Notes under the pieces: model-generated
What the model was told of the DNA's origin: nothing
Databases searched by the model: none
Seen by the model: the letters and a program-made list of their open reading frames with translations, nothing else
In this document: positions 4,560-11,436 of the stretch, in pieces
Layout: each line of letters starts with the position of its first letter
How positions within the stretch are numbered: position 1 is the first letter of the stretch
Source: Sphyrna mokarran
Lineage: Eukaryota
DNA: 64,000 bases
Reading direction: 5' to 3'
Assembly (NCBI GenBank): GCA_024679065.1
Contig: JAGIQG010000009.1
Span: 107,632,001 to 107,696,000 of the forward strand
Translations under genes and position numbers: made by a program

Positions 4560-6475
4560 GTGATTCAAGAAAGCAGCTTCCCACCACCTTCTCAATGGCA
4601 ACTATGGATGGGCAATAAATGCTGGCCAGCCAGTAACGCCCATGCCCTAAAAATGACTTTAAAAAAAATCCCAAATGTTAAACGAATCGCTCGATCTTAC
4701 TTCTGTTTTTCTCTATTCTAATCATATTCACCATGCTGATTTTCCTTAACGTGAATCTTAGCTTTGCATCTTTCTTCCTCAAAAATATCCACATTAACCA
4801 CAGTGCAAATCAAAACTGATTTTGATCAGTTGCATTGAGTTTTATCACATACCGTATTTACAGCTTGGATTCCTTGTTTAATTGTTAACCTATACGCATT
4901 TTAAATTGATCGCATACTTTCAAGCTGGAAGAACAATAAAGTCCAAAACAGCGTATTGCAGTGACCAATATAAGTGAAAACTTTAGGAGAAAATATACTC
5001 TTTCCTTAACATAGACTTTCATTTTGAATAGAGAATTCTCCGGCTATGCTGGTCTTAAAGTAAAAAATTTCCTCCCGACTGTCAATGGCATTTCACAAGC
5101 TCCGCAACCCGCCCGCTAAAATTCCAGTGGCGGGCGGGAAGGGAGAATCCCAGCCATAGTTTCTCAGCGCACTATTGCCTGAGACTTTATATATGTGACA
5201 AAAACACTGCTATCCGCAAAACCTGGGGCAAATTGATCAAGAATGCTATAAACTAGTGAAACATTCTGAGGTTTACTCGAATGTACAATTAGGTAAGCGG
5301 TCATCTTCAATTTTGATGACCAGACTGTAATTAAATGGAGTGAAGACATTAAATCAATAATTCAATACGTGACAACGGTGGGGCACGTTGGTGGGTAGCA
5401 GTTTTTTTTATTCTTGTAACTAACTGAAACATAGTTAGTTATAACACAATTTCCCTTTCTTTTTTTTCTTTTTCCGCGTCACGTCCTCTCATTTCTCCTT
5501 TAAGACTGTCCCGAGAGTCTATCAGTTCTTGGTTAAGACGCTGGAATATTTCACTGTAGTGTCAACTGTTGCTTAATAATGATTTGCATTGGGATGTTTT
5601 ACACGGTGAAAAGCGCTACGTAACCGCAAGCTACATCTTGTTATAAGATTCATGCTTCTTCCTGGACTCGGCAACATCGGCTACTTTCTCCCTAAGCTTC
5701 CCAAATCTATCCATGTTAAGTCAAATGAAGTAATTATGGACTTCTATGAAAATTAATTTGCGAGAGAATTTGGTCACGGTCTCATGGTGTGGAGCACGCG
5801 GCGACAGTACTTGGTTTTGTCTCAGAATCGTGCGACACACACAGTAGGTGGCCAATTGCCCAGTCCCTTTGCCTTCTTCACACCCCTTTCGCCGAACACA
5901 TAGCGCACAGAATCCCAATCATTCCCTATCAAATCTGCACTGACCCTGTGAAAGAGCAGTCAAGCGAGGCCCACTCCCCCACCCTAGAATAATTAACCTG
6001 CGCATTTAACCTGGCCAATCCACCTAACCCGGAGTGTGAAAGGAAACCAGGAGCAAATCTGCACACTCAGTGGGAGAACGTGCAGACTTTGCTCAGGCAA
6101 TGACCCAAGCTGGGAACCGAATCAGATGTGACTATATCGGTCTCTCCACTAATTGATTCTGCGGTAATCAAAACACATCTAAGGTACAAACCATGGTATT
6201 TCTGATTTCAAAATATGCAAAATTCAGTTCCATTTGTTAAACAAAATAAGCGTAGCCAACGCTGTCATTATTTTGATTATCATCATTTTGATGTTCTGTC
6301 GCTCAAGATACATTGCAACGTCAGCTAAACTAACCGGGGGCGTCCTTTCACATATACGGCATTCAACACACTGCAGGGAAGATACAGACCTGCAGTAACT
6401 TATTCTACCTAGTGATCAAGTTGAATTTAGTATAATTAGCTAGAGGTCTGCAGCAGTGAGGAGGAAATTTGAAAA

Positions 6476-6804
6476 TAGAATACAATTTATTGAATCCCTA
6501 CAATGCAGAAGAAGGCCATTCAGTCCATTGACCCTGCACTAACAACAACCCACCCAGGCTCTATATCCATAATCCCAAGTATTTACCATGCTTAATCCCG
6601 CTGACACTTAGGGTCAATGTAGTGTGGCCAATCTATGTAATCCACACAACTTTGGAGTCTGGGAGGAAACCGGCGCACCCGGAGGAAACCCGCGCAGATA
6701 CGGGAGAACGTGCAAACTCTACCGACAGTCACCTAAGACTGGAATACGAACCCCGGTCGCTGGAGCTGTGAGGCAGCAGTGTTAACCACTGTTCCACCGT
6801 GCCG
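6476..6804 (-). mobile_element. tRNA-headed HE1/V-type SINE (CR1-type tail) inserted in TM exon B
   Basis: Head cggcacggtggaacagtggttaacactgctgcctcacagc, B-box gggttcgtattcc, central ctccgggtgcgccggtttcctccc; possible TTTTCA TSD at 6805-6810 and 6470-6475. Confidence 0.9.
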
Positions 6805-6891
6805 TGAAAAGGATGAATGCCAGCAAGACTAGTACCAACGCTGACGCTATGAGCCGATAAACGTTCCCTTGATTTGCAGAATAAACGCGGC
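6782..6891 (-). CDS. NCR3: Gene 1 alternative terminal transmembrane exon B (GRVYSANQGNVYRLIASALVLVLLAFILFTARWNSG*). Isoform B would be 168 aa.
   Basis: Strong polypyrimidine acceptor cttctttgcttgttttctctctgtag|GC, phase 1, in frame with V. Hydrophobic helix preceded by Arg. Clear paralogy to TM-A. The last residues and the stop lie in a SINE head. Confidence 0.6.
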
Positions 6892-7277
6892 CTACAGAGA
6901 GAAAACAAGCAAAGAAGAAACAACAGTTTTTCATTTCTCCATTCTGCTTTTGATGTTAACGCTGCTTTATTTGAGAAACCCTCCGCTAGCTTCGGTGCAG
7001 AGTGCCACAGCACGAAGATGGCGAGCAGATAAACGAAACTTAGTGTTTTACGTGCTAGCCTGTGCTGTTGGACGCTTTATTTAGGCGTAAGTTTCAGTTC
7101 AAAAAGTGTCAACTGAGTACAAAGATACAGGTTAAAGACGGCCAGCACATAAAGCCACGGGGAAATGAGAGTTCAGTGAACATAAGGCTGTGTATCATAA
7201 ACGTCTAGATTTCAGTGTGTCTGGTTTTCGGAGATGAAGTGTTGCATCATGTGCTGTGCAAGAGTTTTCTTATTCTT

Positions 7278-9002: not shown

Positions 9003-10740
9003 CTTTAGAGAGACAACAGCAGCAGAAACATGTTTTTCTTCCCATCTGTGTTTTTGATGGGGGTGGGGGGAGGAGGACTGGAGTATTCTGGGCTTCGTGC
9101 TTCAGTTGAGAAACCGCAGATGAATTTCAACACGTCGACGCACAGAGCATCGAGCAAATGAGCAGAAAAGTCAAAATAATGTGTCAGCCACATCCCGGTT
9201 TGTGTTTGGCTGATGGCCGTTTAGTACATTTTAGTTGTAAGCAAAGCAACTTAAGGTGAGAGTCAAGAGCATTGGTGCAGAGAGATGGTGAGCAGATAAA
9301 GCCAATAGAAGGTGCCAGTTCGGTGAATACAAGATTCCCTCGCGGATCGTTTAGTTAGTGTAGGGAGATGGTGAAGTGAGCAGTTATACAATGTTGTGCA
9401 CAACTCTCTTTCCCCGCGCCCGCACTACCCCACCCTTCACCACCCCTCTCTCGAATTTGTTTGGCATACAAATAAATTATTTTTTTTCCAGTAGCTAGAA
9501 CCTGAATTCTTATTGCTGTATTTTCACATCCCTGAGGGTATCTCGAGTTCTGATTCAGTAGCTAGCTGTACACAATGCATATCCCAAATATAAAAAGGCT
9601 GGAATGCCTTCAGTTTTTACACAAATGGCAATCTGTGTTCTTGCTGCCTTGTTTTTATTTCTGCTGGTGTAGAGGAAAGTGTGTTCCAATATTGTGTTTG
9701 CCCATTTCGCCAATACAGCATCCTGGTATCAGATATGTAGAAAGAGAATAGTCTGGTAAATCCTCATCTAACTAGAATCCTCCTTTCTATTCTGACTTGT
9801 CTCATTATAATTGTTGGAATGATGACTTTCCAGTGGCAAGTATTGTCGGCACGTGACAGTAAATAGTGCAGAAAGGATCGCCAACCAAGTTTGCTTTTCT
9901 CTCACTTTTTAACTTTAGGATTATTGTAGAAATGAAGTTCGTACAGTTTTACCCATTCCATTGTAACGTGGTCGTGGTTAACATTGGAATCAGGGTTATG
10001 GTACTCAGGTGGGATATGAAGTTGGATCCACAATCCAATGATAACCTATTTTACAGTTTCTATTTCGCTATGTTTGTGTTTATGTAACAGCAGCTGGGTA
10101 TTTTTGCCCAATGCAACGTGAATTTATAGCTGGAATACTTATGCCTACCTACATGACTATTAATCCTGAAATTCAATTAATGTTCTGGGGACCAGGATTC
10201 GAATCCCAACGTGGCAGGTGTTGGAATTTGAATTTAGTAAAAAAAAAGGGAACGGCAATAAATGCACAAGGGTCTGGACAGAGTAGTTAGAGTGAAACAG
10301 CTCCCTATTGTGATAGAATCGAGAAGGAAATGAGATGGATTTCAGGTAATCCGCCAACAAGGACATGAGGGAACTAAAGCATTCATTTCATGCACTGAGT
10401 GGTTGGGATCTGGAATTCACTGGTATGTTGGAGGCAGCTAGTTCTGAATTTCAAAAGTGAATTAATTAAGGATCGAACATTCGAAATAGAATATGATACG
10501 GTTTTGGAAAAGTGCCAGGGATTGGGGCACATTGTGTTGCTTTAGAGGTGAGCTTGTACAACAAGCATGCACATACACGGGGGGCTGAAATCATTGTATG
10601 TTGCTGTGACTGTGCTTTATACCTGGCCCAGAATTCTCCTTCACTATTGTAGAAGCATAGTAAACCCGGACAAATGAAACCCCGAAGGCTGCATCCGATC
10701 CGGTCATGATGTAAAGATGCCGGCGTTGGATTAGGGTGGT

Positions 10741-10955
10741 AAGAACTCAATAAGAATTTAGCAACACCAATTATTAATCCAACCGATTTATTTGATAGTA
10801 AATCCGCGAGCTTTCAACACTCTTGTGTCTTCCTCAGGCAAGTGCAGTGTTCTCTTGCCTGAGGAAGACACAAGAGTGTTGAAAGCTCGCGGATTTACTA
10901 TCAAATAAATCGGTTGGATTAATAATTGGTGTTGCTAAATTCTTACTGAGTTCTT
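10741..10955. mobile_element. Near-perfect inverted repeat (102-bp arms, 11-nt loop), Penelope pLTR-type palindrome with minimal hammerhead cores
   Basis: Arms 10741-10842 and 10854-10955 are reverse complements with one mismatch seen. Each arm contains CTGAGGA-stem-GAAAGCTC on one strand. Confidence 0.85.
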
Positions 10956-11082
10956 CCGATCCCGTCAGCATTCAATTTGTGTGGGCAAAACACAGAGTGG
11001 GGGACTTTATTAATTATCCCTAGTTCCCATTTACCTGTCTATTTGTAAGGAATGTGAAGCTACAGGTGCAACACAAACTCAC

Positions 11083-11436
11083 CATTTACTGTGACATTTG
11101 TTCCTTCTCCGGTCCCGTTTCCGCCGATCACAAGCTCCACATCACAGTAATACTTCCCTGTGTCGTTCAGGTTCACATTGGTTATCGATATGGATGCGGT
11201 TCTAAATTCGTAGAATGAAGATCCATCAGAATTCTGAACACGTCCGATATATTCTGTGCAGTTGTTGCAGACTTCACGGGTTCGGGAATCTTTATACCAA
11301 GTGACTGAACCAACGGCTCCGTTTCTTGAATCGGTCGCATCCTCACTGAAGCTACAATACAGATGGAAGGTGCCGCCTTCTTTTACGCTAATAGAGTTCG
11401 GTGTTTGCTTGACTGTAACTCTAGAGTCAGTAGCCC
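11083..11436 (-). CDS. NCR3: NCR3/NKp30-like gene 1, single pre-joined VJ-type Ig domain exon
   Basis: Acceptor tttatgtttacag|GG, donor G|GTGAGT, 354 nt, phase 1-1. Translation has B-strand Cys, AVGSVTWYKD, DTGKYYC and GNGTGEGTNVTV, close to recalled human NKp30 motifs (AIGSVTWFRD, DASIYVC, GVGTGNGTRLVV). Confidence 0.92.

What the first reader, a model, noticed from the sequence alone, without database searches (positions are those of the whole stretch)
6405..11436. One NKp30-like V domain, two paralogous transmembrane exons: candidate splice-controlled signalling switch
Seen: two phase-1 TM exons lie downstream of the single V exon, each with an intact acceptor. With the SINE removed, TM-B reads GRVYSANQGNVYRLIASALVLVLLAFILFKFPPHCCRPLANYTKFNL. 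This aligns with TM-A plus its read-through, DRVDSE...TYLLTFSVLAFVVLALILTKLIYILQCNGPPGNYSEFSL, so the two exons are duplicates. At the key position TM-A has Y-L-L (CTG) and TM-B has Y-R-L (CGG). No second V exon is visible between them. Established: mammalian NKp30 couples to CD3zeta/FcRgamma through an Arg near the outer end of its TM helix. Inference: alternative use of the two exons could give one ligand-binding domain either an adaptor-coupled activating anchor (B) or an Arg-less anchor with only a late Lys and a short tail (A), i.e. a paired receptor in one gene. Direct A-to-B splicing is also in frame and would give a two-helix protein.
Basis: partly seen in the sequence, partly recalled or inferred. 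Interest (0 to 1): 0.85.

Follow-up and report, generated by a model that had tools for sequence, protein, structure and literature searches.

The report
Shark NKp30-like gene, duplicated membrane exon
A shark immune-receptor gene of the NKp30 family carries two old copies of its membrane-anchor exon, and the second copy, which has an arginine and is cut short by a jumping element, is more likely a leftover than a working splice switch, although that remains untested.

Summary
The anatomy is real. On the minus strand one NKp30-like V exon (11436-11083) is followed by two homologous phase-1 stalk/TM exons: A (9002-8865) and B (from 6891, split by a SINE at 6805-6471). Leu (CTG) in A is Arg (CGG) in B.

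The interpretation needs correcting.
- The closest proteins are horn shark XP_067865303.1 and bamboo shark XP_043533738.1, at about 60% identity in V. Both have an uncharged TM with Leu at that position and a long tail with tyrosine motifs.
- A homologous tail exon lies downstream of B (2684-2565). TM-A is therefore the canonical exon of an inhibitory-type gene, not a short-tail anchor, and B sits in its intron.
- B has lost the donor (GT to CT) and carries an old SINE, about 14% diverged.
- B also keeps a strong acceptor, an open frame, a hydrophobic helix, in-frame indels only, and a SINE-borne stop plus AATAAA.

My reading: B is a relic or minor exon (about 0.55); a working Arg-TM, tail-less alternative isoform has about 0.17. 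A frog NCR3-like gene model with two alternative TM exons is an annotated precedent.

The parts
14251..14293 (-). Candidate leader exon: ATG, 14 codons plus 1 nt, donor CTG|GTAAGT. A TATA-like run lies about 40-60 nt upstream.
   Evidence: Found by a pattern scan and read. It aligns with the N-termini of P0002 and P0003. The donor matches 8 of 9 consensus positions.
11083..11436 (-). NKp30-like V(J) exon, phase 1 at both ends, open and intact.
   Evidence: human NCR3 chains, E about 1e-11; Pfam V-set, 3.8e-13; 61% and 60% identity to P0002 and P0003.
9003..9340 (-). Intron flank upstream of TM-A that is homologous to the flank upstream of TM-B.
8865..9002 (-). TM-A: stalk plus uncharged TM exon, 138 nt, with acceptor AAG|A and donor CAG|GTAATT. 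It has Leu (CTG, 8952-8950) at the key position. This is the canonical exon by homology.
8824..8864 (-). Read-through of the TM-A donor: 13 codons, then a stop at 8826-8824. Its first 21 nt are the best-conserved stretch between A and B (17 of 21).
   Evidence: my count on the alignment.
6892..7190 (-). Intron flank upstream of TM-B, homologous to the flank of A. It contains the strong polypyrimidine acceptor.
6806..6891 (-). TM-B, the part before the SINE: a shortened stalk (15-nt in-frame deletion relative to A) and a hydrophobic helix with Arg (CGG, 6856-6854).
6471..6805 (-). SINE inserted in TM-B. It supplies 7 codons, the stop (6784-6782) and an AATAAA (6491-6486). It differs by 14.3% from a majority consensus of 9 copies in the window.
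6405..6470 (-). The old 3' part of TM-B, now behind the SINE. At the position homologous to A's donor, GT has become CT (6439-6438).
2565..2684 (-). Homologue of the family's cytoplasmic exon, carrying an I-Y-x-x-L motif. Its acceptor is weak and in phase 0. It ends in TAG TGA, and similarity to P0002 continues in another frame at 2553-2509, so it is truncated relative to the homologues.

Best explanation
This is a member of the shark NCR3/NKp30 multigene family, of the subtype with an uncharged TM helix and a cytoplasmic tail carrying tyrosine motifs.

Gene order on the minus strand: leader (14293-14251), V (11436-11083), stalk/TM exon A (9002-8865), then after one or more unidentified small exons a tail exon (2684-2565).

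A block of roughly 550 bp holding the stalk/TM exon was duplicated long ago. The second copy, TM-B, now lies in the intron between TM-A and the tail. TM-B has since:
- lost its 5' splice site;
- acquired a Leu-to-Arg change;
- lost 15 and 6 nt in frame;
- received a SINE that ends its reading frame 7 codons after the helix.

I think the main product is V-TM-A-tail. I think TM-B is a leftover, or at most a minor alternative or terminal exon.

Shown: the exons, their homology, the lesions, and the derived state of the Arg. Inferred: which exon is used.
For: - Homology: exons L, V, TM-A and the tail are collinear with P0002 (Heterodontus francisci XP_067865303.1) and P0003 (Chiloscyllium plagiosum XP_043533738.1).
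- TM-A covers the whole stalk/TM of P0002 (42 aa, 59.5%) and has a donor matching 8 of 9 consensus positions.
- At the position homologous to that donor, TM-B has CT.
- TM-B lacks 5 stalk residues.
- TM-B is interrupted by a SINE 14.3% from the local consensus; the 9 copies range from 11.4% to 22.5%. The interruption is therefore old.
- Arg is derived: 3 of 3 relatives have Leu.
- No short relative was found. A search restricted to proteins of 64-205 aa with the V exon scored none of 5 candidates, so no short V-plus-TM isoform sharing words with this V is on record.
- There is only one tail-exon copy and one V on this strand.
Against: B does not look like freely decaying DNA.
- Its acceptor is better than A's: 16 of 18 against 14 of 18 pyrimidines, and T against A at -3.
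- The frame is open, and both exonic indels are multiples of three.
- The helix is as hydrophobic as A's (KD19 2.57 against 2.56). In neutral simulations starting from A, only 1.2-3.8% of runs kept that value, and 7-28% kept an uncharged run of 16.
- B has no more unique amino-acid changes than A: 9 against 9 with P0002 as outgroup, 9 against 8 with P0003.
- A-B dN/dS is 0.38, on 38 codons with dS saturated.
- CpG obs/exp in B is 1.23, against 0.38 in A and 0.40 in the window.
- The SINE puts a stop right after the helix, followed about 290 nt later by an AATAAA that only 1 of 9 copies has.
- The gene's own tail exon looks damaged, so the 'canonical' isoform may itself be impaired.
- No transcript data of any kind were available.
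Confidence: 0.55

Rival explanations
1. TM-B is a working alternative terminal exon. Splicing V to B and polyadenylating at the SINE-borne AATAAA would give a V domain on an Arg-bearing helix with a 7-residue tail, the adaptor-coupled design. V-A-tail would give the tyrosine-motif design. This is the reader's single-gene paired receptor, corrected to 'inhibitory-type long form versus activating-type short form'.
For: - B has a strong acceptor, an open frame, a stop directly after the helix and an AATAAA.
- The Arg sits 3-4 residues into the helix, as in mammalian NKp30-type sequences among the hits (P0071, P0092, P0131).
- In the family the two designs almost exclude each other: 31 basic-TM without motif, 19 uncharged with motif, 2 both, 9 neither, of 61. 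B fits one design and A plus the tail fits the other.
- B is not accelerated and retains CpG.
- Precedent in an annotation: frog LOC142100225 isoforms X2 and X3 differ only in the last 36 residues (5 differences), which means two paralogous TM exons used alternatively.
- The evolutionary route 'charged TM residue plus tail loss' is documented for KIR and Ly49 (PMC2213150, passages seen).
Against: - There is no transcript evidence.
- V-to-B splicing must skip a well-formed exon A.
- An intronic terminal exon would more naturally be joined from A's donor, giving a two-helix product.
- The donor loss, the SINE insertion and the single-base Arg are what decay would also produce.
- No short isoform is on record for relatives.
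- Adaptor coupling is not testable here.
Confidence: 0.17
2. Origin rival: TM-B is the orphan of a neighbouring paralogous gene whose leader and V (and gene A's own tail) were removed by a deletion, rather than an internal exon duplication. This concerns history. It is compatible with B being a relic today.
For: - A and B are very divergent: 13 of 38 residues identical, about 60% at nucleotide level, dS saturated. Yet each is 55-58% identical to the horn-shark exon, as expected of old paralogues.
- The window lies in a cluster of NKp30-like genes. There is a second gene at 47926-48264, and first-stage notes on neighbours s1-887039 and s1-887747 (unchecked).
Against: - Detectable homology is confined to about 550 bp around the exon.
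- No V, leader or tail remnant lies between A and B.
- At 60% identity, older intron homology would in any case be invisible, so the test is weak.
Confidence: 0.2
3. B is included after A (8865>6891, in frame). This would make the default or a frequent product a two-helix, tail-less protein ending in the SINE. It could be a loss-of-function or decoy form, and it matters more if the damaged tail exon is no longer used.
For: - A's donor and B's acceptor are both good and phase-compatible.
- The tail exon has a poor acceptor: 7 of 18 pyrimidines, in phase 0, which does not fit A's phase-1 donor without an extra exon. It also has premature stops.
Against: - There is no RNA evidence.
- A type I receptor with a second helix and an extracellular C-terminus has no counterpart among the 61 TM-bearing representatives inspected.
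Confidence: 0.08

Closest known systems
Heterodontus francisci XP_067865303.1 (NCR3-like, P0002) and Chiloscyllium plagiosum XP_043533738.1 (LOC122541177, P0003)
   Same: They share the leader, the V(J) domain (61% and 60% identity), the stalk/TM exon, and a tail exon with the I-Y-x-K-L-N...R-P-P-D...C pattern.
   Different: Each model has one TM segment, uncharged, and a full tail of 114-126 residues with further tyrosine motifs. The window gene has two TM exons and a tail exon that stops early. I could not read their genomic loci.
Human NKp30 (NCR3) and NKp44 (NCR2) splice isoforms
   Same: The V domain is NKp30-like. In mammals a TM Arg or Lys pairs with Asp of CD3-zeta/FcR-gamma or DAP12. 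Splicing changes signalling: NKp30 a/b/c through exon 4, and NKp44-1 with an ITIM against NKp44-2 and -3 without one (PMC5371597, passages seen).
   Different: In mammals the variation lies in the cytoplasmic exon, and the TM exon is single. Here the candidate variation is between two paralogous TM exons, and the canonical one has no charge.
Recurrent conversion of inhibitory KIR and Ly49 into activating forms
   Same: The same two changes occur: a basic residue enters the TM, and the tail is shortened so that the ITIMs are lost (PMC2213150, passages seen).
   Different: There the changes happen in a duplicated whole gene. Here they sit in a duplicated exon inside one gene, and function is unproven.
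Mixophyes fleayi LOC142100225 isoforms X2 and X3 (XP_075040259.1, XP_075040260.1)
   Same: This is an NCR3-like gene model whose isoforms share all V exons and differ only in the last 36 residues, the stalk/TM, with 5 differences. Two paralogous TM exons are used alternatively.
   Different: The two frog exons are nearly identical and both carry Arg, so there is no change of signalling design. It is an automatic annotation whose RNA support I could not see.
Nurse shark NCR3 family (Kinlein et al. 2021, Immunogenetics 73:333; GenBank MT914154-61)
   Same: It is a multigene, divergent NCR3 family in a shark. The accession range is named in PMC12227049.
   Different: The paper is not held. What it says about TM charges, tails or splice forms is unknown to me beyond recall of its abstract. 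It may already describe such variants.

Membership tests
NCR3 / NKp30 family | V-set Ig domain that is closest to NKp30 among known structures | tested here: met
   The top four PDB sequences are human NCR3 (3noi, 9fww, 3pv6, 6yjp; E 1.0-1.3e-11). The next hit has E 6.6e-5. Pfam V-set scores 3.8e-13.
NCR3 / NKp30 family | Germline-joined VJ exon with a G-x-G J-like motif, and phase-1 exon borders | tested here: met
   A single 354-nt exon ends in G-T-G-E-G-T-x-V-T-V, which aligns with G-T-G-N-G-T of human NKp30.
NCR3 / NKp30 family | TM arginine that couples to CD3-zeta / FcR-gamma (the mammalian definition; PMC5371597) | tested here: inconclusive
   TM-A, the canonical exon, has none. TM-B has one, at 6856-6854. 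Coupling itself cannot be tested with these tools. Many non-mammalian relatives lack the charge.
NCR3 / NKp30 family | Linkage to the MHC and binding of B7H6 | not testable with these tools
   The window gives no chromosomal context, and no binding assay is available here.
Paired activating/inhibitory receptor made from one gene by splicing | Both isoforms are expressed | not testable with these tools
   The look-up of sequencing runs listed no run, so read laying could not be used.
Paired activating/inhibitory receptor made from one gene by splicing | An inhibitory arm with an ITIM or ITSM in the tail | tested here: inconclusive
   The tail exon 2684-2565 has one M-I-Y-E-K-L motif, homologous to T-I-Y-A-K-L of P0003. 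However, it has a weak acceptor and stops before the distal motifs.
Paired activating/inhibitory receptor made from one gene by splicing | An activating arm with a basic TM residue and a short tail | tested here: met
   TM-B has Arg near the outer end of the helix, and the stop falls 7 codons after the helix. This is a sequence feature only.
Alternative (mutually exclusive) duplicated exons | Homologous exons of the same phase, each with intact acceptor and donor | tested here: not met
   Homology and phase are met. B's donor position reads CT instead of GT, and the exon is split by a SINE. B could act only as a terminal exon.
SINE-derived terminal exon (exonised retroposon supplying stop and poly(A) signal) | An in-frame stop and a poly(A) hexamer inside the element, downstream of a usable acceptor | tested here: met
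   The stop is at 6784-6782 and the AATAAA at 6491-6486. Whether they are used is untested.

The most novel reading that the evidence does not exclude
One shark NKp30-family gene encodes both arms of a paired receptor. Splicing the single V exon to TM-A and the tail gives a tyrosine-motif (inhibitory-type) form. Splicing it to the old duplicate TM-B gives an Arg-TM, tail-less, adaptor-coupled form whose stop and poly(A) signal were donated by a SINE. This would be the KIR/Ly49-style conversion from inhibitory to activating, carried out on a duplicated exon rather than a duplicated gene.
Probability: 0.15. Interest if true: 0.75.

Novelty: new variant of a known kind. Interest (0 to 1): 0.4.

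Why it matters
Paired activating and inhibitory receptors are normally separate genes. They arise when a duplicated inhibitory gene gains a charged TM residue and loses its tail. If TM-B is used, this locus would show the same conversion inside one gene at the level of a duplicated exon. It would do so in the oldest vertebrate lineage with NKp30, with a SINE supplying the new 3' end. That would make the origin of activating partners directly testable. If TM-B is not used, the locus is an ordinary example of birth-and-death evolution in a fast-evolving immune gene cluster. It is still useful for annotation, because automatic gene builders could wrongly join A and B, which are in frame.

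Tried and rejected
Transcript evidence
- The look-up of sequencing runs with 6300-11500, kind rna, listed nothing.

Orthologous loci

Closer relatives or this gene's own annotated product (search for homologous proteins)
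- With the V exon, 0 of 5 candidates scored.
- With the P0002/P0003 alignment, 2 of 5740 candidates passed at E<=1e-5, both of them the queries.
- With P0002 residues 133-280, 1 of 191 candidates passed, the query itself.

Missing exons
- I looked for ITIM-like open stretches downstream of A. I also ran local alignments of the P0002 and P0003 tails against 1-8864.
- Apart from 2684-2565 and the frame-shifted continuation at 2553-2509, nothing stood out. Other hits had equal scores and no collinearity.
- The small exon that must bridge A's phase-1 donor to the phase-0 tail exon was not found. The distal tail (N-E-E-S-V-V... and the C-terminal motif) was not found in the window either.

Other checks
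- A second tail exon or a third TM exon: none.
- Rejected: that B belongs to a V exon of its own between A and B. No V-like hit better than E 1 occurs there.
- Rejected: that the A/B similarity is just hydrophobic composition. It extends into the polypyrimidine tract, the stalk and the region behind the donor.

Papers
- Kinlein 2021, Flajnik 2012 and Ohta & Flajnik 2015 are not held.
- A search for 'NS344823', 'shark NKp30', 'NKp30-like' and 'NCR3-like' returned 0 papers.
- A search for 'alternative transmembrane exon' with 'activating' and 'inhibitory' returned no paper containing the phrase among the 12 listed.
- No supplements were opened.

Full report
WHAT IS THERE

The finding lies on the minus strand. 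Translation by coordinates confirms three exons:
- a 354-nt V exon (11436-11083, phase 1 at both ends, donor GTGAGT);
- a 138-nt stalk/TM exon A (9002-8865, donor CAG|GTAATT);
- a second stalk/TM exon B that starts at 6891.

B is interrupted at 6805 by a SINE that runs to about 6471. That stretch has 24 other matches in the window. As the genome stands, B reads 28 own codons, then 7 SINE codons, then a stop at 6784-6782.

The key position is CTG (8952-8950) in A and CGG (6856-6854) in B.

tblastn of the V peptide finds only this V and a second, plus-strand V at 47926-48264. Every other hit has E of 1 or worse. So there is no V exon between A and B.

THE TWO TM EXONS ARE OLD DUPLICATES

- blastn aligns A 9059-8988 with B 6955-6877 (75% over 80 nt, E 1.5e-6).
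- A global alignment follows the homology from about 9340 to 8800 in A and from about 7190 to 6400 in B. It runs across the SINE junction at roughly 60% identity.
- Inside the exon, B differs from A by two gaps, of 15 and 6 nt, both in frame.
- At the position of A's donor, B has CT (6439-6438).
- Over 38 aligned codons, dN is 0.45 and dS is 1.18 (saturated), giving a ratio of 0.38.
- The SINE copy in B is 14.3% from a majority consensus of nine window copies (range 11.4-22.5%). The insertion is therefore old as well.

WHAT THE GENE IS

The V domain is closest to human NKp30. Four NCR3 chains score E about 1e-11, and the next hit scores 6.6e-5. Pfam V-set scores 3.8e-13.

A full phmmer scan of 1.84 billion representatives gave 235 hits at E<=0.001. 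The two closest are P0002 and P0003.
- P0002 is XP_067865303.1, 'natural cytotoxicity triggering receptor 3-like', from Heterodontus francisci. It has 280 aa and 61% identity.
- P0003 is XP_043533738.1, from Chiloscyllium plagiosum. It has 294 aa and 60% identity.
- Both have an uncharged TM and tails of 114 and 126 residues with [ILVST]xYxx[ILV] motifs.

- a leader at 14293-14251 (found, read);
- the V exon;
- TM-A over the whole stalk/TM;
- the core of TM-B over the same columns;
- a tail exon at 2684-2565 that shares the I-Y-x-K-L-N...R-P-P-D...C pattern.

The gene therefore runs past TM-B, and TM-B lies in the intron between TM-A and the tail.

THE TAIL IS NOT HEALTHY

- The only AG acceptors in front of the tail exon (exon starts at 2684 or 2678) are in phase 0 and follow an A-rich stretch with 7 of 18 and 4 of 18 pyrimidines.
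- A ends in phase 1, so at least one small exon must lie between them. I could not find it.
- The exon ends in TAG TGA. Similarity to P0002 resumes in another frame at 2553-2509, at the expected spacing. That alignment score alone is not above background.
- The distal motifs of the homologues were not found in the window. They may lie beyond its start.

IS THE ARG MEANINGFUL?

TM-A, P0002 and P0003 all have Leu at that position, so 3 of 3 relatives lack the Arg. The Arg is derived and needs one base change.

I inspected the family's signalling designs.
- 97 of the 150 listed representatives have at most 340 aa.
- 61 of those 97 have a TM by my hydropathy rule.
- Those 61 split as follows: 31 have a basic residue in the TM and no tyrosine motif. 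19 are uncharged with a motif. 2 have both. 9 have neither.
- The Fisher P is 3e-7, but relatedness inflates it.

B (Arg plus a 7-residue tail) fits the first design, and A plus the tail fits the second. The mammalian principle that a TM Arg or Lys pairs with Asp of CD3-zeta/FcR-gamma or DAP12 is stated in PMC5371597 (passages). That the NKp30 Arg is near the outer end of the helix is my recall. It is consistent with the mammalian-type sequences.

RELIC OR WORKING EXON?

For a relic:
- the donor is lost;
- the SINE interruption is old;
- the stalk is shortened;
- the Arg is a single derived base change;
- no short relative (64-205 aa) sharing words with this V is on record;
- V-to-B splicing would have to skip a well-formed exon A.

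Against a relic:
- B's acceptor is stronger than A's (16 of 18 against 14 of 18 pyrimidines; T against A at -3).
- The frame is open and the indels are in frame.
- The helix is as hydrophobic as A's. In neutral simulations starting from A at 14-30% divergence, 58-76% of runs kept an open frame. Only 1.2-3.8% kept the hydropathy, and 7-28% kept an uncharged run of 16.
- B has no more unique amino-acid changes than A: 9 against 9 with P0002 as outgroup, 9 against 8 with P0003, and 6 against 5 where both outgroups agree.
- A and B are only 13 of 38 identical to each other, but 26 of 45 and 21 of 38 identical to P0002.
- CpG obs/exp is 1.23 in B (6 CpG in 86 nt, P 0.015 at the window's level). It is 1.03 in the V exon, 0.38 in A and 0.40 in the window. 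B's flanks are also raised (0.80 and 0.84), so this may be regional.
- The SINE offers an AATAAA at 6491-6486 that only this copy of nine has.

These tests have low power because they rest on 22-38 codons. P0002 may also not be a true outgroup. They argue that B was constrained for much of its history, not that it is used now.

PRECEDENTS

- In the frog Mixophyes fleayi, isoforms X2 and X3 of one NCR3-like gene model are identical up to residue 264. They differ at 5 of the last 36 residues, which means two paralogous stalk/TM exons used alternatively. Both carry Arg, and the RNA support of that model is unknown to me.
- A sawshark model has an isoform that skips the TM region.
- Splice-controlled signalling is known for NKp30 (exon 4) and NKp44 (ITIM or not) (PMC5371597).
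- Inhibitory KIR and Ly49 have repeatedly become activating by gaining a charged TM residue and losing the tail (PMC2213150, passages).

The nurse-shark NCR3 paper (Kinlein 2021) is not held. It may already describe TM or tail variants.

VERDICT

- Best reading (0.55): an NCR3-family gene of the uncharged-TM, tyrosine-tail type with an old duplicated stalk/TM exon that is now a relic or a minor exon.
- The corrected switch hypothesis (V-A-tail against V-B ending in the SINE) keeps about 0.15-0.17.
- An A-to-B two-helix product keeps about 0.08.
- Whether B began as an internal duplication or as the orphan of a deleted neighbour (0.2) cannot be decided here.

The decisive data are junction counts and orthologous loci.

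Noticed in passing
window 10734-10962: A near-perfect inverted repeat sits inside the V-to-TM-A intron: arms of 109 nt, 96% complementary, 11 nt apart. It looks like a foldback or MITE-like insertion.
   Followed up: partly
window 47926-48264 and about 50631-50744, plus strand: A second NKp30-like gene in the opposite orientation. Its V exon is 28% identical to the first (E 1.3e-10). Its stalk/TM exon carries a Lys in the middle of the helix (read). So an activating-type member exists as a separate gene 37 kb away.
   Followed up: partly
window 6655-6704 and 8506-8555: The SINE inside TM-B and the SINE just downstream of TM-A are in opposite orientation: 50 nt, 82% complementary, 1801 nt apart. 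Together they bracket B's acceptor. In a pre-mRNA they could pair and hide or loop out that acceptor.
   Followed up: no
window 6100-7200: CpG is retained around TM-B: obs/exp 0.80 upstream, 1.23 in the exon and 0.84 downstream, against 0.40 for the window and 0.38 for TM-A. This is unexplained.
   Followed up: partly
window 8844-8864 versus 6419-6439: The 21 nt just behind A's donor and the homologous stretch of B are 17 of 21 identical, clearly above the roughly 60% of the rest (my count on the alignment). This could be an intronic splicing element or a once-coding read-through.
   Followed up: no
window 7256-7990, 13551-13991, 864-1580: Long TG/CA-rich degenerate microsatellite blocks produce spurious ORFs of 122-238 aa. 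One of them fills most of the A-to-B interval.
   Followed up: no
window 18394-18774, 29865-30593, 52450-52878: ORFs that look like the C-terminal parts of a retrotransposon reverse transcriptase, judged by eye from the translations. No family search was run.
   Followed up: no
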